From: Podarcis gaigeae
Taxonomy: Eukaryota
NCBI GenBank assembly: GCA_964106915.2
Contig: OZ066927.1
DNA length: 64,000 bases
Direction: 5' to 3' (one strand)
Positions 12,871-58,779 of the stretch are shown in pieces. The position numbers and the translations under genes were made by a program. Each line of letters opens with the position of its first letter. The first letter of the stretch is position 1. The notes beneath the pieces were generated by a model that was given only the letters and a program-made list of their open reading frames with translations, had not been told where the DNA came from and made no database searches.

Positions 12871-15326
12871 CTTCCATGCAAACAGGAGTGCCTTTCAGGG
12901 GGGGGCATGACAGAGGGGAACAAACACTGGGAGGAGCAACTTCCACAGAGATCTTTGCCCCATGGCCAGAAGCCAAATTGTACAAAACATCAAAGGGTCA
13001 GATTTGGAATCCAAAGGTGAACAGAACAGGAACCAGACACTAGGAACCCTGAGGTGGGAGTCAGCAGAGCACCATCTATGGGGGACCCAGTACACAATGG
13101 TACCCCAGGCCACCACCTCCCACTGGTATACCACAACCCAATCCCTACATTCTCATGAGTCAGGAAAGAAAGCCATTTTCAAATTATTTTACTTTTCTTA
13201 CATTACACTGGGGCTTTTCTGACATGCCTCCAACCACCAGCAGTACCCACGATTTTTAATAAACATTCAGTCTAAAGAAGAGTCCAACAAAACTTATGTC
13301 ATAACTTTTGATTGCCCTAATAAAAACACTATCCTGTTGTTCTTCTGATCCAATGCAGCAGCACACACTTCATAAACACTTTACACCTTTATTTTTCTGG
13401 ACTTTTCAATTGCAAAATCATGTATCATCCCCCTAAAGTTTATTTGTCTTGCTAGTTTACTCTCAAAAGACAAAGCACACAAAACAGCCAGGTGACCTAA
13501 CTGTTCCTGCCTAGTGTGTGGTTTGAACTAGACATTCCCCAAACACATACTTTGGACTTGTCAATCCGCCTAGCAGTGCTGGCTCTGTCCCTGGGATGCA
13601 TGTCCTTGATTATTATGCTTTGCCCCTTCCACAAACTTGTACCTTCTTCCTTGTGCACAACAAAGTCTGGATCAGGCCAAAAGGGGCCCATCTGGTCCAG
13701 CATTTTGTTCTCACAATGGCTAGGCGTATGCCTGTGGGAAGCCCGGAAGCAGGACCCCAGCACAAGATCCCTCTCCCCACCTGTGGTTTCCAGCAACTGG
13801 TATTCAGAAACATTACTGCCTCTGGCTGTGTAGGCAAAGCAGAGAGTTTGTTATAAAGGGAAAGATAAATGTTCTCTCTCAAACAGCATGTCCTAATTTT
13901 ACTACCCAAGCTCACTCTCAGAGATAGGGAAGGGCCTGGCCCCACAACTCACTGTTCATAATGTTGTTTGTCCTGCTCTAACACGGCTTCTGATTGGCTC
14001 CAGCAAATCTCACAAGATATCTAGACAATAGAGGCACAGATAATGTCCATAAATATCCTCAAGCATAATCTACAATTTAGCCTCCATTTCTTTTCCATGC
14101 AGCAATGGGAATGTAGCCTAACCTGCCTCCATCACAGATCTCTGGACCCTAATAAACTGTACCATTTCCCCTAACTGACCTTCTAATACTTGGGCCTGAA
14201 ATGAAGGGGAGTGAGGCATGTAAGGAGTGAGGGAAAAGGTGCTGGGAGATTGAGAGACTATGGAGCAAGCTCCCAGGCCACAACAAGACTCCCAACTAAG
14301 AAAAGCTTACTGTACCTCGCATTTCCACATCATGTCAAGCAACATGTCAAGTAACCTGAAGATACACAGCCATTATGCTGGTGGAACAGCTGCTCTAGCA
14401 AGTGCTCAGCTGGGAGAGAAAGCCCAACTCCAGAAAATGCAAAAGCAAACTCCAGAAAATGTTAAAAGAACTGGCGTCCCTAACATCCCTGACACAGCAC
14501 ACCAACCAGAGATGATGGCCTAGTCTCCATGTGATATGAAGAAATACCATAGCTTTGCATGAACAAGAGAGCATGCAAGTGAGTGCATGAAGCAAAACTC
14601 CCAGCTTCTTATTCCTCCCTTAATCCTGCTGCCACTATCATGTTACCCTAATTGAAACCATAGTTTGGTTTAGCATTAAACCATAAGCTCAGGTTCAGAT
14701 GTATCTCCCAGTGGCTATGGCCAGTGTTAGTAACTAAAATATGAAAGCTAGGAGCTAAACGGCACCTTAAACCTAGGTTATGGGCACAACAACGGAATGT
14801 CTAGGCTCCCTTTTTTATAACAAGAATGCAAAGCTGAAAATGAATGAACCGCAGTTAAAATATTATATTATGTTCATTTTTGACATGGTCTAGTCCTTCC
14901 CCTGCTGACCCCCCTAATATTCTTAAGAGGATCTCTTCTTCAGTCTTCAGAGAGTAGTTGGAAGTGGGGATGCAGAAAAAGGTGCTCCTTTCCTTCCACT
15001 CTGTAGTTTTAATCTGAAATCTTAGACACAGACAGTACTGCACCCAGAAACTGCTCGCACTAATGAAATTCCCTGTCGCAAAATGCGCCTAGAACAATGG
15101 GAGTTTCCAACACTGGCTAGTGGCTTATCTGAACAGCAGTACCAAATGAAGGAACTCTGTGGTTTAGTCCACAAAGCAGAAACAAACAAGTTCAGGATGT
15201 TGCTGATTCTAATTCACCTGGGGGAATTTTCATCAGTTGAAAAGGATGTTGTCAGCACAGCTATGGAGAAACATGAGCAAATGCACACACCGGTTCCTGT
15301 GGAAATTCAATTACCCCAAGGGAAAG

Positions 15327-44933: not shown

Positions 44934-46105
44934 CTACTTTGGCTGCTGCTGCTGAGTCTCTTCCTTCTTCTCCTTGGCAGCCTTCTGCTTCTGCTGCATG
45001 ATTTCTGAATCTCTGGGGAGAGAAAAACAGGCAAGGCAGTCAGGCTGTGGCCACTGAGTCCGGAAGGCGGACCTGGGCCTGAGGGCAGGTGCTGGGCTGC
45101 TGGCAAATAAAGGTAGGGCAAGGGCTGCCTCAGTCGCCACTGGGCCTGAGAGAAGGGGCTGTCACTCTGGCCTCTGAGGGCTTTGACAAGGGGCTAGGCT
45201 AGGATTTGAGTGGAAAGTAAGAGCAGGGATGGAGAAGCAGCAATAACCAGCCATAGCCAGTGGCGGAACCTCAGGCACAGCCGCAAGGATGTAGTGCGGG
45301 GGGGGGGCAGCTTCCCCCCTAAATCAACCAAAATCAATATAAATCTGATGTTCCCTCCCAACAAAAGCCTCCCCCCCCCCAACAAAAATCCTGGCGACAC
45401 CTGTGACTGGCAGCCTTAGCCCTCAACAGCAATGCCATGGAGGAGTCTTGAGACACCTTAAAGACAAACAGACTGAGAAGGGCATCCAAAGAAGCGGATG
45501 CCAGGAGCCCCGGAAAGCTTGTGCCACGAGAAGCCTCGTCCCTATCAGACAACAGGATGATGCCCACCGCTCACCGCCAGGGGCGGAAGAAATAGGAAAA
45601 GCAGGAAGGGTGGGGAGGCAGCCAACCGTTCCTGGCTCTTGTCCCGGCCAGGTCTTTTATGCTAAGGAGGAGGCGCCGCCTCCGGGCTCGAGGCCCGGCC
45701 CAGAAAAATACCCAGCCCGACCTTGTTCCCCTCCCGCCCGGCGCTCACCGTTGCTTGCGGGCGGCGGCGGAGAGGCCGTCGTCGCGGCGCTTGCCCTTGT
45801 CAGCGTTCTTCTTCATGTTCTTGCTGCGCGCCAGTTCGCGCTGGTTGCCCCCTGCACCGCGGAGAAAGGTAGTGCACGTGTAAGCGCGGCGGGGGCCGGT
45901 CAGGCGGGGCCCCGGGGGCCACTGCGGGCCGCCGAGCCTTGACGGGCGGGGGGAAAGGGCGGCAGAGGCGGAACTCCCCCCGCCTTGAGCAAGTCAAGGA
46001 GGCAACGGGACCTTCCAGCCCATATCCTCCCCCACCCACCGGAGGGTAATAAGGGGGCGCGAGACCGGACCGGGAGGAGGGGGGGGAGTCCCGCTTACGC
46101 GTCAT
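44934..46105 (-). CDS. SERF2: Small EDRK-rich factor 2 (62 aa), 3 exons
   Basis: Exons 46105-46099 (ATGACGC), 45851-45749, 45012-44934. Protein [62 protein letters not shown]. Minus-strand AATAAA at 44757-44762. Confidence 0.96.
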
Positions 46106-47640: not shown

Positions 47641-49245
47641 GCAGCAACACCAGGAAGACTTCCTCCTGCAGGCAAGGCTCTTTCTTTGACTGCCCACCTG
47701 TGGAACTCCTGACTGCTTCAAAGAAGGCTGCCCACTACATTTGAGCACCAGGGCCTCTGCTAGGCTCCATTTCACCCAGACATGCCTGTTGTTGAGGATG
47801 AAGCTGTTCCTTTGTCCCATCTTCATCAGAGACTAGACACTTTTAGGCCAAGCACCCAAAAAAGAGTAGTTGAGTTGCTCTGCAGCCTACATCCCTTGCA
47901 TGAACTCACTACCGGGGTGACCCAGCACCTAAAGGTGCTCCTCTCTGAAAAACCAGGCCATAAGAGAGTCCTCCTGAGAGTTCTTAGAGGGAGGTGGGAA
48001 ATGTTGTTCCTAACTGAAACTGCAAGTACACACACAACCCTCTATGAAAATCCAGTTGCTCAGAGGTTATCTGCCTTCTACAATTTAGGGGATACTTTTA
48101 GGACAGAAGAGAAGTTATTCCTACTCTCCTACAAAGAAGGAGGACCTTCTCTGTACTTGACCTGCTACAGCTCATGAGTGAGGCTGCCACAAGAGAGGTG
48201 ATGGTGACTGGTGGTAAATATTGTGTGTGCAGTCAGAACACAGACAATTTCAACAGCAGCAAGAAGAAGAAGAAGAAGAAGAAGAACCCTGCCAAGGGAA
48301 ACCAGGCAACTGGGATATCAGAATGGCCCTTGGTGGATCTTCACAGCAATAAGGAACCCTTGAAGTACATGGCCCTTATGGTGCACATAGATGTACATCC
48401 TTGGGGGGGGGGGCAAGGCTGCTCTCCATACAACCAATTTTCACTCTTTTCAGCCAAACTGCAAAGTGCTGCCTGGCTGGCCCTTGTGGCAGTCATGAAG
48501 CCCCTCCTTTGCCCAGACTTGTGTTTCAAAGAGGTATGGGAGAAGAACACAACACAGTAAGAGTGGTGTTTGTCTGCTTTTAGAAAAGGGAGAATAATCA
48601 TGCCAGAAGCAGAGCACCCCACCCCACAATGCAGAAAACCCTTTGCCATTCCGTGCAGGGAGCTGTATGTCTGTCCACACCCTGGAATTTGTTCTCCTCC
48701 TCAGTTCAACACTAGGAACAAGCCAGTCTTTGGGATGAATGAGACATGTATTCCAAGGTGGCTTCCCTGCAGATTGGCAGGGAAATGAATAGAGCACAGA
48801 AGAAAATATAAGCAGCAAGCTGGGTTGCAGGGCAACATCCAGCCTCAGAGTATCCAGCTTCAGCAGATCTTCCCACCCTTTCACAATGACAGCCTTCCTT
48901 TACACTTAGGGAACATCATCATCAAAGGTGTCAATGAGAGCCAGCCACTTGACTTTGGGTGCCATGTTTCATTCTTGGATAAACGTCGCTTGCAAACCTC
49001 TCAATTGCTGCTGCTGGTGGTGGTGGTGGTGGTAGAGAAAAAGGAGGAGGAATAATTCCTTTTGGGACTTAGAGCCACACAGTTCCATAGCAGCTGTGGG
49101 TCTGCCCCATCCCAGGAGAAACAAGTGGGCACACACAACAAATATTTGGCCCTGACACCCCTCAGAAGTCCTTGCTGTTGGAGAAGGTGGAACTTCATAT
49201 TTCTGCAAGGCTTTCTACGGTCAACCCAGGAAAAGAAGCAGCCAC

Positions 49246-52200
49246 TCAGCTTGGCTGGGGAGCAGGAGCATCTGTCTGCAAAAGATGGCAGTGAGGAGAC
49301 ACATGAGCCTTCACAGCCTCACAATTTCTTATTTATCCCTTACATTTTTTCCACCTTTCCTCCAAGGAGCTCAAGGTGGCATACATCTCCCCATTTTATT
49401 CTCACAACAACCCTGTAAGGTAGATTAGGCTTGGAGGCAGTGACTGGCCAAAGGTCACCCAATAAGATTAATGGCTGAGTGGGGATTTGAACCTTGGTCT
49501 CCCAGGCCCTAGTCAGCACTCTAACCACTACACCACACTGGCCAGACAACATGCCCACAAAGGCAGCTGCCACAAGGCCACCGGAACATTCTTGGGAACC
49601 AAAACCAGCAGCAGCAGCAGCACCCAGGATAAAGGGGCTGGAAAGCACCTGCTAAGTGACAAGGACCCTCAATCCTTTGCCTTAACTAGGCCGTGATAAC
49701 AAACCTGAGCACTGTGAGCAATGGTGGGTGTTGCCATGTCTTCCGGAGTGGCCCCTCCTGGGCCAGGACATTCCATCTGCCCCCTCTGCCGCCTTGCTAG
49801 TTTGGAGAGCTCAGCATGGATAGCCTAGAGACAGCCAAAGTCATTTTAATCCTTCTGGGGAGCAAATGGTTAATACACTCGGAAGGCGGGGGGGGGATCA
49901 CCTCCAGTGCCCCCTGAGCACCCTTCCTCCAGTGGTAGGAATATGATGTCATCTCAGTGTGAGCTGAGCAAAAGGGGAGATGCCAGTCACAAGTGCCGCA
50001 AGTGGCAGAGGATGAAGCTGGCCCAGCAAAGATGGACCTTCCCCACCGCCTCTGTCTTTGCCCCTAGCATGTCCTGTTGCCTCACCTTGGTAGTTGGCTC
50101 CAGCTGCAGTGCCCTCTTCAGAACGGCGGTGGCTGCCTGGTCTTCTCCCCGCTCTGACAACAGCTAAATAGCACAGAGAGAGTGACAGAGATGGGGTGGT
50201 ATATGAACTGGGTAGGGGTGGGGAAGCCTGCCCTTGTCCACCTCTTTCTCTGGCTGTTCTCTGTAGCTGTTCCTTGCCCCTCCCTCATGCCTTCTCTCAC
50301 CTCTTGTGGTCACAACTCCCTTTCCCCCCACTTCAATCCAGACACAGCATTAGGTCAATATTGTGGAACAGGGACCTTTGCCACCCCCCTCCACCCCAGT
50401 CTGGATCTCAGCCAGCTGTACAGCCTTCAGCATGCCGTTCCCTAGCCAAGTTCTTCCCTCCTGGCCCTGGAGCCGCTGAGGGGCTGGGAGGCGTTTCCCT
50501 CATCACCTTCCCTTTCCTGTAAAGTGCCTTGATGTTCTCTGGGTCAAGCTGTATAACTTCATTGCAGGATGCCAGGGCCTCATCCAAAAGCTTCAGTTTC
50601 AGCTGGGCGGCTGCACAGTTGTTGAGGCATTTGACCCGATGGTCATGCAGCTCCTCTTCCTCCTCCTGGCTTGGGCAGTCTAGAGAGAAACCCACATAGG
50701 TGCAGCGTCACCCCCAGCCATAAAGTGCAGCTGGGGCTGAGCCCCAGAACTGGGCTTCTGCAGTAGGGATGGGTCAAGTGTGCCTTTGCGGGAGAGCACC
50801 TCTGGGACAGGGTTCCTCTCCCTTTTCATCCAAAGTGCCCAGATTTGGGCTCATGGCACTATTTCCAGGCAAGCTGCCGGTCAGCTCTAATTGAACCTGT
50901 GCCAACCCCATGTTTCCAACAGGCACCCACATGGCTGTGTTGGGAGGGCTTCATCCCAAGCCCTCAGAACAGTGCCTCACCTGTCCCTGGCAAGGAGAGG
51001 ACATGCAAAGCCTGCTGGTAGGAGTGCAGGGCCTGCTGGTAGTCCCCCCGCTCAAAGTGGAAGTTGCCCCACTCCCGCTTCTGGTTGCCCAGGCTGAGGC
51101 GCTCCATGGTGGGCAACAGCAACAGGTCCGGGCTGTCCTGCACGTGCAGCAGAGTCACCTCATACAGCAACGTGGCATCTTTGGGAATATCTGGCTCTCT
51201 GCAGGAGGAGGGGGAGGAGAGGCCTCTGAGAACACACAGCTCTCTTCCCCCACCAAGGGCCCAGATGTTGCCCCCCTCCCTGTCCACCAGTCACAGTGCA
51301 GTGCAATGATGGATGACTACCTGCCCAGGTGACCATAGGCACAAGCAGGGCCAGCAAGGAAAAGGGCTATTTCACCCAGCTGCATGGAGAGGACGCCAAG
51401 GTCCAAAGCCTAGGGAGACAAAAAGGAGACAAGGACCTGACCCGAAGTGCCCCCCCAAACACACACAAACAAACATATATCCTGCTGTCACACCTCTCAG
51501 CACCAGTACATGCAAGAGTACATTGGCTTGGGTGCAATAGCCATTCTCACATGGTCTGCATTGGCCTCTGCTGTAATGGCGCACAGGTAGAAAAGGTGAG
51601 ATCCTATGTAGAGGGAGGGCCCTGTAAGCATGAGTTTGGGGGTGGCTGCAAAGCTGCTAGTCCTTTCCACTGAAACAGAACAGAAGCAGAATGGCGGCAA
51701 GATCCCCCCCATTGGTGGCATTCAGTTGCTCAAGCAACGGAGAGAAATGGGGGCTCAGAATGGGCTGCCAGGCAAAGCCAGGGGGGCAAGGAACAAGGAA
51801 GGTTGCAGCCTTCCCACACCTCACCTGTATTGCCTCCCCCTGGCCGATGACAAAGGTGAGCTTTTGGTCCTTTTCCACCAGGCTGTGGTCCTCCAGGATT
51901 CCCAGCATCTTCACAGTAACCTCTTGGCCCAGTTGTGGCCAGCTGCCTCCCTCTGGACTGCTCTTCACCAGCCACTTCCGTAGGGACTTGTCCTCTGGAG
52001 GGTGGAAAGGGGAGAATCAGTTCAACTACAGGTGGAGGTGTTTGCCTGAGGAAGTGTGTGGAACTCCAACTGCCCAGGTGCAGAGGAAGGAGGGCCAAGG
52101 GAGTGCTGGAGGATGAGGAAGTTACAGCCCCTCTCTCACAACACAACCTGCTCTGGCCAAATGGAGGGGCCTTTTCTCCTCGCCATGAGGTACTGCAGTG

Positions 52201-53203
52201 TCCCACCCGCCCAGTTACCTCCAAATGGTCCTGGGCCAGGGTCTGATTTACGCATAGGTGAAGTACACCACAGTTTAGGGCTTCAGGTGATGAAGGCCTC
52301 CAAATGCAAAAAAAGGACTAGTTTGTTTTCATTTGCCTTCTCTGTCCTGATATCTACACAAGAACAAAACATTTATTTCTCTCTTCTGCCTTCACAATCT
52401 GTTAGACAAATATACTTTTGGGGGAAGGGGTAGAACAATGGGGCCTCTCAAACTTGGCAGAGCTGAGGGCATCAGAAGGTCTTAATGTGGTTCCCCACAC
52501 CCACCAGTATTTCTCCTGCCTGGGGGGGAAATCCACGTCCCCAGAACTTTAAGCATTTGCATTTTATTATGCTGCCTTCGCTTATCCTCTTATTACTTTT
52601 GATGCACCACCACACATTCTGTGGGGTGCTGAGGTGGGCATCAGTCAAGCCACTCCTCATTCTGATGCACCTCTAGAATCCCAAGGGTGTGACGGCTGAG
52701 GCGGGAGCAGGGGGTTTTCTGGCTAAGAGGCAGCGAACCCAGCAACCATCTCCTGCCCCCAGGGGCTTTTGGCTGTGGCGCTTGTTAGCCAGCGATGTCA
52801 CCCCGTCCCCCAATGACTGGCAGCAAAGAGGATCCTGTAGGGTCTGAGAGGCCGAGCTGCCCTATTGCCTCCAAGGCCCTCTGGGCAGCAGCGGGACCCT
52901 CCATCTCCTGGCCTGAGAGCCCCCTGAGCCCCGGGCCTCACCTCGGAGGTCCTCCCAGCCGTCAGCCGCAAAGAGTGCTGCAAAGCCGCCTCTTTCTCCT
53001 CCCAGCAAGCGCTCCAGCCGCTGGTAAAAGGCTCGCTCCTGAAGCTGGGGCGGGGGCTCCTGGATGATAGTGTGGGGCAGCAGGAAATGGACCCTCCGTC
53101 CAAGGTGGGGGCTGCCTCCCTCCAGCAGCACCGGCCCCAGGCTGGCGCCCGCCCCTTCGCCTTCCTCCTCCTCCTCGCCCTGAAACATCTTGACCAGGAA
53201 CAT
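49246..53203 (-). CDS. FKBP8 (FKBP38)-like immunophilin paralogue: FKBP domain plus 3 TPRs, about 379 aa (possibly the orthologue of fish fkbp16)
   Basis: Exons 53203-52942 (Kozak cccaccATG), 51994-51825, 51409-51321, 51198-50981, 50679-50507, 50163-50086, 49824-49705, and a tentative last exon 49275-49246. All junctions are GT-AG and in phase. Peptides GQEVTVKMLGILED, IQALDLGVLSMQLGE, AYGHLGREPDIP, KREWGN, VKCLNNCAAAQLKL, NIKALYRKGK and IHAELSKL are colinear with FKBP8. Confidence 0.88.
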
Positions 53204-55200
53204 GGTGGGCAGCTCCTCCGTCCTCGGAAGGGGCTTCCCGGAGCGAGGGGCTTTGCCGGCAGCCGCGCATCAGGATCTCGAGGGATTTGTTTCCCCGCCT
53301 TGCATGCGACGGTTGGAGCAGGCCGGCAGCGGCAGAAGCGAGAGGCCGCTTAGCCGTCTCTCCTTACCTCAGTCTACACTGAGCGCCTGTAATTCAATTA
53401 GAGAGTAAGCACCCTACGCCCCAGCTGCGCTCAGGCTTACTTCCAAGGAGGATCTGGGCGTCAGGCTGCGGCTGGGTTTAGCAGGGATCAGCAGGACCCC
53501 CTCCCACATCTCAAGCGGGGCCCCTCCCTTTGGGCTGCCTTAATAAACCCAAGTAAATGCCTTCGCGTCTATAACAGAAGAGGCGGCGAGCAGCAACCCG
53601 CTGTTCACCCAGACGCGACGGAAAAGGGGTTTTCCTCTTATACTACGCAAGGCCCCAAAGACTTGCCCTAAGAGGGAAGACCTCTCGTGGATGAATGGGT
53701 TCCTCCCCATCTCCTGACAGGCTAGATTCTGAGAGCACGAGGTTGGCTTTTCCCTCCCTCCCAATTCTCTCATGTATGAACAGACCACCCAGAAGCAGAA
53801 ATGCCAACCTCAATAAAAAATTGGGGGAGCAGGTAAGCCCCGCTCGCATAATTGATCACATGATGCGGTGCATGCACACTATTTGAATAGCAGTGCCCAT
53901 CAACTGTGGGGGACGGTGGCCCCCGCAAATATTTTGGGGGGCGCTGAACACCCCTCGGCGCCTAGGAGGTGGCTCCTATGCCCAGAAGTAAACGTCTATG
54001 AAGCCGCTCAACCGAAGAGGCGCATCCGACAGTCTTAGCGGTTGTTAGGGGATGCTGCTCCGTCCCAGATTATTGCCCGGTGACCTGCGGGGCTCTAAGA
54101 GGCTTAGTGGAGAATCCCAAGAAGCACGTGGCCCCGCTGCACGTGGCCATGCGTCCGGGGTCGGCTGCGGCGGGGGGCTTTGGAGTAGATGCGAGGCCCG
54201 GGGCCAAAGTGAGGCCCAGCCCAGGGATCTCCGGTCTGGGGGACCGGCGACAATGTCTGGGGGACCGGCTCCCCCGACGCCCTGGGGACCGGCCATTCTT
54301 CCTCGGGGCAAACTGTTGAGGGGCTTGGTGGGTAATCGGCGGCGCCCTTCTTCTGGACGGGACGGCAGACTAAAGCTCAGACGTCTCTTCTTGCTCCGGG
54401 CCTTCCCCACGCCTCAAACGGAGGCAGGTCTGGCCAGGCATCCCGGGCTGGGCACGCGCACCGGTTTGTGGAGCAGCAGCGGCTGCCGAGCAAGGAGCAG
54501 CGGCTCCGCCCCGCCGTCGAGCCCAAGTCCCGCCCAGGCGCCGCCGCCACAGCCGCTCACTCCAGCGATGCCGCGGCGGGCGACGGAGCGCCTTTCCTAC
54601 CGCCCCGGCTCGCGGGGCGCCCGCCTCAGCCTCTTCCACGTGAAACTGACCGACTCGGCCCTCCAGGCCTTGCTCGCTTACCAACGGTGTCAGGTAACGG
54701 GCTGGACTGAAAGCGATTGCCGGACGGCCGGTCACTTGGCGGAAGGGGTGGTCTCACTGCCCGCTTTTTTTCTGCAGGTGGCGGCGCCTCGTCCCGTGAT
54801 CGCCTTCCAGGGCAGCCAAGGGGTGAGGATATTTCCCAGCGCCGTGCATTGGGCAGATGTCCTGTCGGGTCCCATCGCTGGGGCTGGGCAACGGAGGGGT
54901 GCCGTGGCCGTTGCTATCGCCGTGGGCGCCGCCTGCTTGCTAACGAGCTCCCCGCGGCTTTCTGCAAGGCGGCTAACGAGTCTCGCGCGAGCGGCAGACC
55001 GAGCCTGGCTGCGGCCTCCTCCCCGCGGAATGCTCTGCTGTCTTGGCGTTTGAATGGGGCAGCCCGCCCCGTCGAAAGTCGCTTCTTTTTCGGGCTGAAA
55101 GTCCCCTTTAGTAGCAACGGAAGAGGGAAAGAGACGGGGCGGGCAGGAGCCGCGCCTTCGCTGCTCTGTACGGGGAGCCCCGCCCACTCCCTTCTTGAAC
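52700..55200. promoter_or_regulatory. CpG island / candidate bidirectional promoter for the FKBP8-like gene and ELL3
   Basis: Divergent start codons at 53203 (-) and 54568 (+); CpG-rich; tandem GCACGTGGCC E-boxes at 54124-54133 and 54139-54148; minus-strand donor GAG|GTAAGG at 53368 suggests a non-coding first exon. Confidence 0.6.
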
Positions 55201-58200
55201 AGGGCCAAGACTGAACGCTGGAAATGCACTGCCCCACAGTGTTTTTCACCTAGGCAGAGCCAGGCCCCACAGCCACAGAAACAGCCCCCAACCACATGTC
55301 TAGGGTCAGGCCCTGCTCCTGAGGCAAAGGGGCCAGACCAGATCCCCCCTCTTCTCTTTCTATGCTGTCCAGTATCTGAAGGTGCCCTGCGGTGCCACTG
55401 CCGGCCGTCGTGACCCACGGACGTTCCGCTTCACCTTCTACCTCTCACGCTATACGAAGGAGCAGCCGCAGGCCAGCTTTGATTGTGTCCGCCAGGCCAG
55501 TACCAGGTGAGCTGGCCCAGCCCAAAGGCTGTTTCCCTGGGAGGGTGGGAATGGGGGAGAGAGGCTTCCCTGAACATTGCTCTTCTTTGCCCAGGTGGCT
55601 AGAGGGCAGAGGAGCCATCCAGGAGAAGATCACCATCTGTGCCATGGTTGTGGAGGCCTCCCAGTCCAGATGGGGGGTAGAGAGGTCGACCTGCCATAGG
55701 GCAGCAGCTGCGTTCCCAAACCCAGGTGAGGAGAGAGGGACAAGGGGCAGTAAGGGGTTCTTGGATAGGAGCTGAAGGGGGAATTGGCACAAATTGCCAC
55801 CACCTCTCTCCCCTACCCACTTCCTGAAAGGAATAATTTGTGAGTGCTGCCATTCAAAGATCTCTGGTTCTAACCTAGAATGTATATATCCTAAGAAGCA
55901 GTGGAACTTGTTTTAAAACCACCTAGCAAACTGTTTTTACTAACGTGTGATCATAATGGAAGTTTAGTTTGGTATCTTAACGAAAACCTTATAACTAGTA
56001 TAAAGCTACCCTGGATTTATGAAATCCTTCCATGTGTGAACCACCTCGAGATCTTTGGATTAAGGGTGGTATACAAATTTAATAAGTGGATCTGAAGTGC
56101 AACATCCAAATTTCAGCTCAGTTGCTATAGACAATCACTGCAATTAGCATTGGGGAGGGGGTTGAGCTACTGACAGCCAAGGCTGGCTCTATTCCCTCAC
56201 TCCCTTTGCCTTGACTTTCTACTTTTCTGCACTGTAGAGACTGGCGCCCTCCTCCCAAGGAAAGCAGCCTCAGAGAGCCCCAGTGGGAAAGGCAATGAAA
56301 GCAGTCCCACAGCCAATGAGCCCCCATGGCCACCAGCGCAGGTGCTGGAAGAAAGCGACCAGAGGGCTAAGAGGCTGTTGGGCTTGTTGGAGAGGCCACA
56401 GCTGCAGGCTGAGGTAGGTCTGGGAAAGGCTACTGGGCTTCCTCACCTTGCTGGAGCCTCCCTCACCACCCCTTTACCCCACAGATGGGGCAGCTGAGCT
56501 CCCCAGAAAGAAGTTACAGCTTGAAAGAAGACCGTCTGCAACCTAGAAAGGAGGCCTGGACAGGTGCTCTGCAGCAGCACCAGGAAGCATCTGAGCACTT
56601 GCACAGGTAGAGCAATGAGTCTGGGAGTTAGACTACTGGGGAGGGATAGGGGATCCTTGTGGTCTTAGTCCTCATTCTCTCTCTCTCCCTCCCTCTCTAG
56701 CATAATCCTGTCTCTTTATGTGTGGGTGCACAGTTGTTTCCACTATTCTGCTCTCACATGGTCAGCTTTTAACAGCTCTCCTTCCACTTCTGCAGGAAAG
56801 AAGCCCAGCAAACTTTGGCCAAGCCCTTCCCAAGCCCTCCATCTGAAAAGTTTGCTCCTTCTCGAGGTGGTAGTCCTTTAAGAGCGGTGAGTCCTGCAAC
56901 AGTGGTGCTTTAATTCAGAGCAGTAGCAGCGACAGCCGATGATGCCATGGCAAGGCTGTGGTTGCATCACCCCCTCTGGGCAGCCTCTCTAATTCCCAGG
57001 CATTGCAGGCTCCTGTGGGCACAGGGGGAGGGGGAGACTTTCTTGTCTTCCATTTCTGCTGTTCGAATTTGCCTGCCTGTGTGTGTCTGCTACTGCATGG
57101 TGGTTTTCAGTTGGTCTTCCTGCCTAGAGGGAACCATCATTATCCTGTTGTTCCTAGTATCCACTTGGCAGATTAGAATTTAAGAGAGGGCTTATCATTT
57201 GCCATACTCAGACACAGTGCTTTAAAGTGGACTGTGCCTGGAAAGAGTGAAGTGTGGATATTATTTTTCAGAGACTACAACCTCTCCGAGCTGCACTTGG
57301 CCCAAGATCCAGGAGATGGCAGGGGCCTCACTTTACAGGAGCCGAGAGCAGCTGGTGGGGACGCAAAATGCAGCCTGCAGCAGCAGTGAAAAGCAGGGCC
57401 CAGACCGATTGCAGCAACATCATAGGAGAGGTTCAGAGCTCGGATGAGGAACCTGAAGCAGGAAGTCATAGAGCACCAGAGGTCGAGTGGCCAGGGGAGG
57501 AGGAGAGGCAGGCAGGTGAGGAGTCTGGCAGATGCACTCCCAGCACAAACATCAAATATGATGGCAACTGGAACCTCTGCAATCTGCTCCTGACCTTGAG
57601 CAAAATGGAAAGCTCAGCCTTCCCAGTTAGGCAGAATGGTTTAAACCAGGAGGTACTTGTACTGTCAATTTGGGCCTAAAAAGCTGTTTAGAAGCACCTT
57701 CCCAATCTTCCTAACCTTCCCGGTGTTTTGGACTGCAGAGCAGTTGGGCTGATTGGAGGTGTAGACCAAAATATCCAGATGGAATGAGCCTGGGAAAGCA
57801 TTGAGCAACACACACTGGTGGGAGATGTTGGTGTCCAATGCCAGGCTGCAGGGCGACTGCTGCCACCACAATGACTCAGCTTTTCCTTTCCCCCTCCCCA
57901 GACCATGCCAGCACCTCAGAGGAAAACCTCAAGTACTACTTGTAAGTATTTAGCTGTACTGCACACAAGGCAAGGGCATTTTTCATAGGCCTCAGCCATT
58001 TGGGAACCAGCATCATTTTCACTGGTGCCCAGCCTTGTTGTACATTTGGTGTGGGGATCTCATGCCTAGGGACCAAATGGAGGTTCTGGAAGACTGTCTA
58101 TGCTGGAAGACAGTCCTTGGAACCAGAAAAAGTTCTACTCCTGATGTGGGAGATGGATTGGAGAGGTGGCTGCTGCTGTTGGCCTTCCCCGCCTTGGGTC

Positions 58201-58779
58201 AAATTCCCCAAGGGAGGAGGCTCTCCCTTTCCATCTTCTGACTCACATAATGTGTCTTTTGAAACTAGGAAATATGTCCCCATTTGCTCAGTAAAGCAGT
58301 ACCGAGCCTACCAGGAGGACTTCAGTGCAGACTACACTACATACCGCCACCTCCATGCCAGGATTGGGAGTGTGAGCAGGAGGTTTGCCCAGCTGGGCAC
58401 AAGGCTTAGGCGAATGCAGCAAGGAACCAAGGAGTACAAGGTAACAACATTCCAGGGAACAAAAGGGAAGTGACCTTCCCTGCCTGGTCCTGGGCTGAAC
58501 TAGCTCTCTTGGGTTACAGGTCCTAGAAGATCAGATTTTGCAAGAATACAGGCACTTCAAAAAGGTGAGTAACCCAGGCTGGCATCAGGGATGGGGGTGC
58601 TTTCTTTCCCCCTGGTGGCTGAACTCTTTCCTTCTCTGCAGGTGTATCCTAACTACCAAGAAGAAAAGAGGCACTGCGAGTACCTGCACCACAAGCTCTC
58701 CCACATCAAGGCTCAAATCCTAAACTTTGAGCAGAATGTCCCTCCGGCTGGGCAGAGGGGCTGTGGCGAGAGGAGATGA
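54568..58779 (+). CDS. ELL3: RNA polymerase II elongation factor ELL3 (about 487 aa), 12 exons
   Basis: Exons 54568-54693, 54778-54822, 55373-55506, 55595-55725, 56238-56413, 56485-56606, 56796-56886, 57272-57515, 57902-57941, 58269-58440, 58520-58564, 58642-58779. Total 1464 nt, in frame. ELL N-domain (SLFHVKLTDSALQAL, PVIAFQGSQGYLKVP, GAIQEKITICA) and occludin-homology C-domain (YRHLHARIGSVSRRFAQL, EEKRHCEYLHHKLSHIK). Adjacent to PDIA3, as for ELL3. The middle exons are less certain. Confidence 0.88.

What the first reader, a model, noticed from the sequence alone, without database searches (positions are those of the whole stretch)
49246..53203. Intact FKBP8/FKBP38 paralogue between SERF2 and ELL3, with no counterpart known at the human locus
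Seen: seven firm in-phase exons with no stops or frameshifts encode an acidic N-terminus, an FKBP domain, three TPRs and the IHAELSKL helix, colinear with FKBP8. Known: in human, SERF2 and ELL3 have no such protein-coding gene between them, and FKBP8 itself neighbours ELL on 19p13. Inference: ELL3 plus this gene is the whole-genome-duplication sister of the ELL/FKBP8 pair, kept in reptiles (perhaps fish fkbp16) and lost in placental mammals, so it is probably functionally uncharacterised.
Basis: partly seen in the sequence, partly recalled or inferred. Interest (0 to 1): 0.8.

Follow-up and report, generated by a model that had tools for sequence, protein, structure and literature searches.

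The report
Lizard fkbp16 without its membrane anchor
This is the wall-lizard copy of fkbp16, a sister gene of the chaperone helper FKBP8 that is named in fish, sits in many non-mammal genome annotations and seems unstudied; in lizards it has lost its membrane anchor, and from sharks to birds it carries a short motif typical of proteins that bind protein phosphatase 1.

Summary
Confirmed: an intact 8-exon minus-strand gene (53203-49246, 379 aa), 375/379 identical to RefSeq 'FKBP8-like' of Podarcis raffonei, so already in annotations. It is the orthologue of fish fkbp16: same ELL-gene-SERF order as zebrafish, and a 100/100 clade from sharks to birds, sister to vertebrate FKBP8. All seven introns match FKBP8, eel FKBP8 also neighbours an ELL gene, and dN/dS is 0.08-0.31. 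No mammal appeared among the 120 best relatives; the human locus was not examined. No paper on animal fkbp16 was found. Added here: (1) The tail anchor is gone. Turtles have two acceptors in the last exon; the anchor-exon acceptor reads TG instead of AG in lacertids and gecko, with a decayed remnant at 49226-49162. Birds apparently lost the anchor separately. (2) An RVxF (PP1-docking) match occurs in 98/101 fkbp16 proteins (7 expected) and not in the two full-length vertebrate FKBP8 tested. (3) FKBP8's client-binding leucines and H7e motif are missing, but the EEVD clamp is kept. Best guess, untested: a soluble scaffold bringing PP1 to Hsp70/Hsp90 complexes. Splicing was not tested with reads. 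A first-reader note on this window had flagged the anchor loss.

The parts
52942..53203 (-). Coding exon 1: start codon, short acidic stretch, RVxF-like motif, fkbp16-specific helical segment
53084..53098 (-). Codons for RRVHF (aa 36-40), a match to the short RVxF PP1-docking consensus; function inferred
   Evidence: 98/101 fkbp16 against 7.2 expected; consensus from PMC4794898
51825..51994 (-). Coding exon 2, FKBP domain
51321..51409 (-). Coding exon 3, FKBP domain
50981..51198 (-). Coding exon 4, end of FKBP domain and TPR1
50507..50679 (-). Coding exon 5, TPR2 and start of TPR3 with clamp residues K297/R301
50086..50163 (-). Coding exon 6, TPR3
49705..49824 (-). Coding exon 7, helix 7 (IHAELSKL) then a disordered linker; no H7e Y-x-x-M motif
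49246..49275 (-). Last coding exon (9 aa plus stop), homologous to the turtle's short soluble-form exon
49227..49228 (-). Dead second splice acceptor: TG where turtle has AG; TG also in P. raffonei and gecko
49162..49226 (-). Decayed remnant of the transmembrane-tail exon (stops in register, internal deletion), now presumably 3' UTR
   Evidence: (p about 0.006 against shuffles for the whole last-exon region, 0.018 for the TM exon alone)
53001..55500 (.). CpG-rich region between the divergent fkbp16 and ELL3 starts; probable shared promoter (inferred)
   Evidence: CpG observed/expected 0.58-1.0 against about 0.15 in the gene body
54568..58750 (+). Neighbour ELL3 (right end approximate)
44934..45858 (-). 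Neighbour SERF2 (later exons; limits approximate)

Best explanation
What it is (shown, about 0.97): the lizard orthologue of fkbp16, a sister of FKBP8 born by duplication in the early vertebrate lineage (probably whole-genome duplication, about 0.8) and kept under purifying selection. How it is made (well supported by sequence, about 0.85): the ancestral gene ended in a tail-anchor exon. Turtles have a second, upstream acceptor that gives a short soluble ending. In squamates the anchor-exon acceptor changed from AG to TG, so only the soluble ending remains; birds lost the anchor separately. How it works (inferred, about 0.45): a cytosolic scaffold. The TPR clamp holds the C-terminal EEVD of Hsp70/Hsp90, and the flexible N-terminal RVxF docks protein phosphatase 1, bringing PP1 to chaperone-bound clients. 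It does not do FKBP8's job of folding ABC transporters, because the client-contacting leucines and the H7e helix motif are gone.
For: Synteny ELL-gene-SERF in zebrafish, turtle, hawk and P. raffonei. Tree: fkbp16 clade 100/100, sister to FKBP8 100/99, invertebrates outside; the AU test rejects grouping the amniote copies with FKBP8, p 4e-63. Seven intron positions and phases are the same in lizard, turtle, zebrafish fkbp16 and eel FKBP8. dN/dS is 0.08, 0.20, 0.18 and 0.31 against P. raffonei, gecko, turtle and hawk. Hydrophobic tail: 0/12 squamates, 0/23 birds, 4/10 turtle and alligator models, 19/20 amphibians, 35/36 fish, 12/12 FKBP8-type. Acceptor CCAG in turtle, CCTG in two lacertids and gecko; gecko still reads WKWLCG in register behind it. 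RVxF in 98/101 against 7.2 expected, 0/2 vertebrate FKBP8, 1/10 invertebrates; teleosts keep K-x-V-R-F but not the Leu-Pro after it; the motif lies in coil with pLDDT about 62 next to a disordered start. Clamp residues R215, N219, N267, K297 and R301 are kept; K308/R312 are needed for Hsp90 binding in FKBP8 (PMC13470449). FKBP8 L97 and L162 are Leu in 12/12 FKBP8-type proteins but Thr in 86/89 non-squamate fkbp16 at the first and Leu in only 1/101 at the second; here they are R87 and S152.
Against: No binding was tested. The short RVxF consensus occurs by chance in about 25% of proteins, and the lizard motif does not meet the stricter extended consensus (PMC4794898). The 101 sequences are related, so the count is not 101 independent events. 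FKBP8 without H7e fails to bind Hsp90 (PMC13470449), and the H7e Y-x-x-M motif is absent in 101/101 fkbp16 (82), so stable Hsp90 binding is uncertain. Only three vertebrate FKBP8 sequences were in the tree, one partial; human residue numbers came from the PDB alignment. Alligator DNA could not be fetched, so its anchor rests on the RefSeq model.
Confidence: 0.55

Rival explanations
1. Same gene and same anchor loss, but the N-terminal V-x-F segment is structural: it and the two helices after it fold back on the FKBP domain (the Leu-Pro could sit in the isomerase pocket). The protein is an EEVD-binding co-chaperone with its own clients and no PP1 link.
For: AlphaFold gives residues 54-79 as confident helices (pLDDT about 90) and 41-50 at 76. 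The lizard motif misses the strict consensus. The surface that contacts clients in FKBP8 is changed in exactly this region.
Against: The basic residue, Val and Phe are kept from shark to bird while Leu-Pro is lost in teleosts. The motif itself has low pLDDT and no secondary structure. Model contacts could not be inspected.
Confidence: 0.25
2. A redundant, soluble stand-in for FKBP8 that folds the same membrane-protein clients with Hsp90.
For: Same fold (TM 0.92 by target, rmsd 2.1 to 5MGX), clamp kept, and FKBP8 without its anchor keeps about 64% of its activity (PMC13470449).
Against: Three of five client-cluster positions are polar here (E84, R87, S152); L97K nearly abolishes FKBP8 function; the H7e motif is absent; the stem branch of fkbp16 is long, 0.68 against 0.26 for FKBP8.
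Confidence: 0.1
3. The lizard protein is still membrane-anchored through another last exon, such as the hydrophobic-looking stretch in intron 7 below 49649.
For: A CAG acceptor-like site and hydrophobic frames exist there. No reads were laid.
Against: That stretch is not similar to the turtle anchor exon (p 0.21-0.27); the true remnant lies after the stop at 49246; five of the eight lacertid models have the same 379-aa length and two more visibly share the short ending; 0/12 squamate models have a tail.
Confidence: 0.05
4. The gene is decaying in lizards, on the way to the loss inferred for mammals; anchor loss is part of the decay.
For: Gecko exon 7 has an early stop; no snake copy appeared in the hit list; this genome has a private R-to-W change at residue 95.
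Against: dN/dS 0.08-0.20 within squamates; open frame in all lizard families sampled; RVxF and clamp kept.
Confidence: 0.04
5. On origin only: a local or segmental duplication in the early vertebrate lineage rather than a whole-genome duplication.
For: Orientation to the ELL gene differs between the pairs; amphioxus FKBP8 lies beside thioredoxin-domain genes, with no ELL within 10 kb; no cyclostome data.
Against: Timing fits; both paralogues neighbour an ELL-family gene; 5q/15q/19p paralogy with ELL2/ELL3/ELL is established knowledge (from memory, not tested here).
Confidence: 0.15

Closest known systems
fkbp16 (FKBP prolyl isomerase 16) of zebrafish, sharks and coelacanth
   Same: Orthologue: same neighbours and order, same seven introns, same clade (49), 54% identity over the core, same RVxF-like motif and changed client surface.
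   Different: Fish and amphibian proteins end in a tail anchor; the lizard's does not. The lizard N-terminus is about 100 aa shorter than the zebrafish one.
FKBP8/FKBP38 (PDB 5MGX; PMC13470449)
   Same: FKBP domain, three TPRs, helix 7, EEVD clamp, identical intron pattern, neighbour of an ELL gene; about 45% identity.
   Different: No tail anchor, no H7e motif, client cluster polar at three of five positions, added RVxF-like motif and N-terminal helices, head-to-head rather than tandem with the ELL gene.
RefSeq 'FKBP8-like' models of lacertids (XP_053220232.1, XP_028562470.2, XP_033023558.1)
   Same: The same gene, 366-375 of 379 residues identical.
   Different: Only automatic names; a few substitutions, W95 being seen only in this genome among the full-length models compared.
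FKBP51/FKBP52 and other soluble TPR immunophilins
   Same: Soluble FKBP plus TPR architecture with an EEVD clamp.
   Different: One FKBP domain only, 25-29% identity and poorer structural fit; they keep an extended helix 7.
FKBPL
   Same: Soluble FKBP-like TPR protein; an FKBPL cluster ranks sixth in the Atlas feature search.
   Different: Human FKBPL is listed among MHC class III genes (PMC1309616) and zebrafish has a separately identified fkbpl candidate (PMC4415967). No FKBPL sequence was available for the tree, so its relation was not tested.

Membership tests
fkbp16 orthologue group | Groups with named fish fkbp16 to the exclusion of FKBP8 | tested here: met
   100/100; AU p 4e-63 against grouping with FKBP8
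fkbp16 orthologue group | Lies between ELL3 (divergent) and SERF2 | tested here: met
fkbp16 orthologue group | Shared intron positions and phases | tested here: met
fkbp16 orthologue group | C-terminal tail anchor as in fish and amphibian members (ancestral trait, not used here to define orthology) | tested here: not met
FKBP8/FKBP38 orthologues | Falls inside the FKBP8 clade | tested here: not met
FKBP8/FKBP38 orthologues | Tail anchor | tested here: not met
FKBP8/FKBP38 orthologues | Hydrophobic client cluster 94/96/97/158/162 | tested here: not met
   E84, L86, R87, L148, S152
FKBP8/FKBP38 orthologues | H7e extension with Y-x-x-M motif | tested here: not met
   0/101 fkbp16 against 8/12 FKBP8-type plus cobra
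FKBP8/FKBP38 orthologues | Calcium/calmodulin-activated isomerase activity | not testable with these tools
   needs an enzyme assay
TPR carboxylate-clamp co-chaperones of Hsp70/Hsp90 | Three TPRs with the five clamp residues | tested here: met
   R215, N219, N267, K297, R301
TPR carboxylate-clamp co-chaperones of Hsp70/Hsp90 | Actual binding to Hsp70 or Hsp90 | not testable with these tools
   H7e loss makes it uncertain
PP1-interacting proteins with RVxF | Short consensus [RK]x0-1[VI]{P}[FW], conserved in position | tested here: met
   98/101, expected 7.2
PP1-interacting proteins with RVxF | Extended consensus with two leading basic residues | tested here: not met
   lizard reads G-R-R-V-H-F; pattern from PMC4794898, compared by eye
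PP1-interacting proteins with RVxF | Motif in an accessible, unfolded region | tested here: inconclusive
   coil, pLDDT about 62
PP1-interacting proteins with RVxF | Motif-dependent PP1 binding | not testable with these tools
   no complex prediction or assay available
Vertebrate whole-genome-duplication paralogues | Duplication after the invertebrate split and before the jawed-vertebrate radiation | tested here: met
Vertebrate whole-genome-duplication paralogues | Paralogous neighbours over a larger block, traced to one ancestral linkage group | tested here: inconclusive
   ELL beside both; only 10 kb flanks; amphioxus lacks ELL nearby
Genes lost in mammals | No orthologue or only a remnant at the mammalian locus | tested here: inconclusive
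   no mammal in the best 120 of 168 (24) nor among the 30 proteins looked up by name; no mammalian locus fetched

The most novel reading that the evidence does not exclude
fkbp16 is an unrecognised PP1-targeting subunit built on an immunophilin: it links PP1 to Hsp70/Hsp90 client complexes in all jawed vertebrates except mammals, is membrane-tethered in fish and amphibians, switchable by alternative splicing in turtles, and was made permanently cytosolic twice, in squamates and in birds.
Probability: 0.35. Interest if true: 0.65.

Novelty: new member of a known kind. Interest (0 to 1): 0.4.

Why it matters
As a gene discovery it is modest: the model is already in RefSeq for this genus and the orthologue is named in fish. 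Its value is that the family appears unstudied (ten literature searches gave no paper on animal fkbp16) while being testable in zebrafish, Xenopus and chicken. It offers a natural experiment on FKBP8: a sister that lacks the client-binding surface described in 2026 and carries a candidate PP1 site, with the anchor lost twice and the lizard loss traceable to one splice-site change. It also warns that many database entries named 'FKBP8' in fish, frogs and reptiles are this paralogue, which can mislead comparative work.

Tried and rejected
They had been inside the earlier run search and were in the unmasked window used as a local BLAST subject; later scripts masked or avoided them in every alignment. 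The run search listed only small-share, possibly RNA runs from related species: inconclusive. The word search with exon 4 gave one fragment, so the single big search was used. The joined spliced model was sent to no search tool: exons were searched by reference, the RefSeq proteins P0170 and P0002 stood in for full-length searches, and the joined model was used only inside local scripts. A search for mammalian ELL3 proteins, meant to reach a non-human mammalian locus, returned four lizards only. Look-ups for alligator, Hemicordylus and Sceloporus loci found nothing on record. The intron-7 hydrophobic stretch was rejected as the anchor remnant. No anchor remnant is recognisable in hawk (p 0.18) or tinamou. 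An Atlas search of residues 28-90 gave nothing above 0.82. The main text of Kuraku and Kuratani 2011 (PMC3296468) does not mention FKBP, and its supplements are not held.
Full report
Observation. The minus strand holds eight coding exons from 53203 to 49246, all with GT-AG introns, giving 1140 nt and 379 aa with no internal stop. Exons 2-3 score weakly to FKBP_C and exons 4-6 to TPR families. FKBP8 is the best natural match among solved structures for exon 4 and for the full-length relative. The model, built before any database look-up, proved 375/379 identical without gaps to RefSeq XP_053220232.1 of Podarcis raffonei, with identical exon lengths; that cluster also holds P. muralis, P. lilfordi, Lacerta agilis and Zootoca vivipara models. 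The window is therefore almost certainly a wall lizard, and the gene is already in automatic annotations as 'FKBP8-like'.

Identity. A full-length search from the Sceloporus relative ranked lizards, then turtles, alligator, birds, amphibians, sharks and bony fish, the fish and sharks often named 'FKBP prolyl isomerase 16'. Zebrafish fkbp16 lies between a divergent ELL gene and a SERF gene, the order seen here; so do the turtle and hawk copies. In a 47-protein tree the window protein sits in a 100/100 fkbp16 clade that largely follows the species tree, sister to vertebrate FKBP8 (100/99), with invertebrate FKBP8-type proteins outside. Forcing the amniote copies together with FKBP8 is rejected (p-AU 4e-63). 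King cobra has a true FKBP8, so squamates carry that gene too. All seven introns match in position and phase among lizard, turtle, zebrafish fkbp16 and eel FKBP8. dN/dS over the core is 0.08 against P. raffonei, 0.20 gecko, 0.18 turtle and 0.31 hawk (dS near 1 for the distant pairs, so these are rough).

Origin and loss. Eel FKBP8 is followed by an ELL gene in tandem, so both paralogues neighbour an ELL-family gene and the timing fits the early vertebrate genome duplications. Against a clean case, the orientation differs and amphioxus FKBP8 lies head-to-head with thioredoxin-domain genes, with no ELL within 10 kb; PDIA3 is the next gene beyond ELL3 here, which may or may not be related. I put whole-genome origin at about 0.8. 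No mammal is among the 120 best of 168 relatives, a list that reaches down to fish, and every short fkbp16-type representative from the exhaustive search has a lizard, turtle, bird or fish best hit. A mammalian copy could still hide in a 50% cluster or among the 48 unlisted hits, and no mammalian locus was fetched. The human locus was not examined.

The anchor. FKBP8 and fish and amphibian fkbp16 end in a tail anchor; none of 12 squamate and 23 bird models does, while some turtle models and the alligator model do. Turtle DNA explains this: its last exon has two acceptors about 60 nt apart, the first giving a 13-residue soluble ending, the second the anchor. The lizard's last exon aligns to the first; behind its stop the second acceptor reads TG instead of AG and is followed by a decayed anchor exon at 49226-49162 (p about 0.006 against shuffles; best match in both directions). 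In register, the Trp codon of the conserved PWK is a stop in both lacertids, while gecko, with the same TG, still reads WKWLCG. One change in the squamate ancestor is the simplest reading, from two lineages only. Birds use a different donor phase at intron 7 and show no remnant; since turtles and alligator keep the anchor, theirs is a separate loss on the accepted reptile tree (established knowledge). An uninterrupted 366-aa bird-type product on a 1788-nt sequencing-run contig, ending without anchor, indicates a spliced transcript in birds (inference). For lizards no reads could be laid. The lead that the anchor is missing was also in note s1-701582; I had seen it and tested it here.

Function. 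The AlphaFold model (mean pLDDT 86) superposes on FKBP8 bound to the Hsp90 MEEVD peptide (rmsd 2.1) and adds two confident helices at 54-79. The clamp residues are kept, including the equivalents of K308/R312 that FKBP8 needs for Hsp90 binding. But the client-contacting cluster of FKBP8 described in PMC13470449 (L94, I96, L97, L158, L162) reads E, L, R, L, S here. Positions 97 and 162 are Leu in all 12 FKBP8-type proteins from amphioxus to eel and are almost always Thr and Ser/Thr in fkbp16 (position 97 varies in squamates). The H7e motif, whose deletion abolishes Hsp90 binding by FKBP8, is absent from all 101 fkbp16 proteins. So fkbp16 left FKBP8's job early. What it gained is a basic-x-Val-x-Phe motif at one position in 98 of 101 sequences from sharks to birds (7.2 expected from shuffles; 0/2 vertebrate FKBP8, 1/10 invertebrates). 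This matches the short RVxF consensus for PP1 docking but not the stricter one, and the short one is common by chance (PMC4794898); the argument is its conservation in an otherwise variable, partly disordered region. My best mechanism is a soluble scaffold that docks PP1 and grips Hsp70/Hsp90 tails (about 0.45); the main rival is a structural role for the motif (about 0.25). Both are inference; nothing was assayed. Isomerase activity was not assessed.

Novelty. Searches of the held literature for fkbp16, its full names, 'FKBP8-like' and combinations found no paper on the animal gene; the library lacks most subscription journals. The gene is a new member of a named but apparently unstudied family, already auto-annotated. 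The anchor-loss mechanism and the RVxF lead are what this work adds. Interest 0.4.

Limits set by the operators. The joined spliced protein was not submitted to any search tool; that step was left out and database proteins were used instead. No contig taken for human was fetched.

Noticed in passing
one search hit list: No snake or tuatara fkbp16 among the 120 best relatives, although king cobra FKBP8 is in the collection; snakes may have lost the gene.
   Followed up: no
L008:3285-6001 and 13455-13527: In Gekko kuhli no ELL3 is called or found by tblastn in the 2.7 kb between the PDIA3-like gene and fkbp16, no SERF2 within 6 kb downstream, and fkbp16 exon 7 has an early stop.
   Followed up: partly
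L007:2633-7006 and L009:1631-5113: ELL3 exons are present by tblastn in hawk and tinamou beside fkbp16 but no gene is called there.
   Followed up: partly
P0196, P0227: Two bird models join fkbp16 with SERF2 (one is named SERF2, one carries the SERF domain), hinting at read-through transcripts or merged annotation; both genes are on the same strand, 0.5 kb apart in hawk.
   Followed up: no
window 51971-51973 (codon 95, approximate): Trp at residue 95 where all five full-length lacertid models compared have Arg, at the start of the FKBP domain.
   Followed up: partly
window 52219-52255, minus strand: Matches the alternative first coding exon of P. raffonei isoform X2 (304 aa), which would skip the RVxF-like motif; a donor-like site lies at 52219.
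   Followed up: partly
window 53368, minus strand: Strong donor-like site upstream of the start codon; possible untranslated first exon.
   Followed up: no
window about 49430-49540: SINE-like insertion in intron 7, by resemblance recalled from memory; not tested.
   Followed up: no
L009:9514-11089: An Arf/Ras-family gene is called between fkbp16 and the Serinc gene in tinamou, where SERF2 was not found.
   Followed up: no
P0122: One unnamed invertebrate FKBP8-type protein also has an RVxF match in its N-terminus; chance or an older origin of the motif.
   Followed up: no
names: Several proteins named plain 'FKBP8' (Anolis carolinensis, Pogona, Caretta, alligator, Xenopus, Esox) fall in the fkbp16 clade.
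   Followed up: yes
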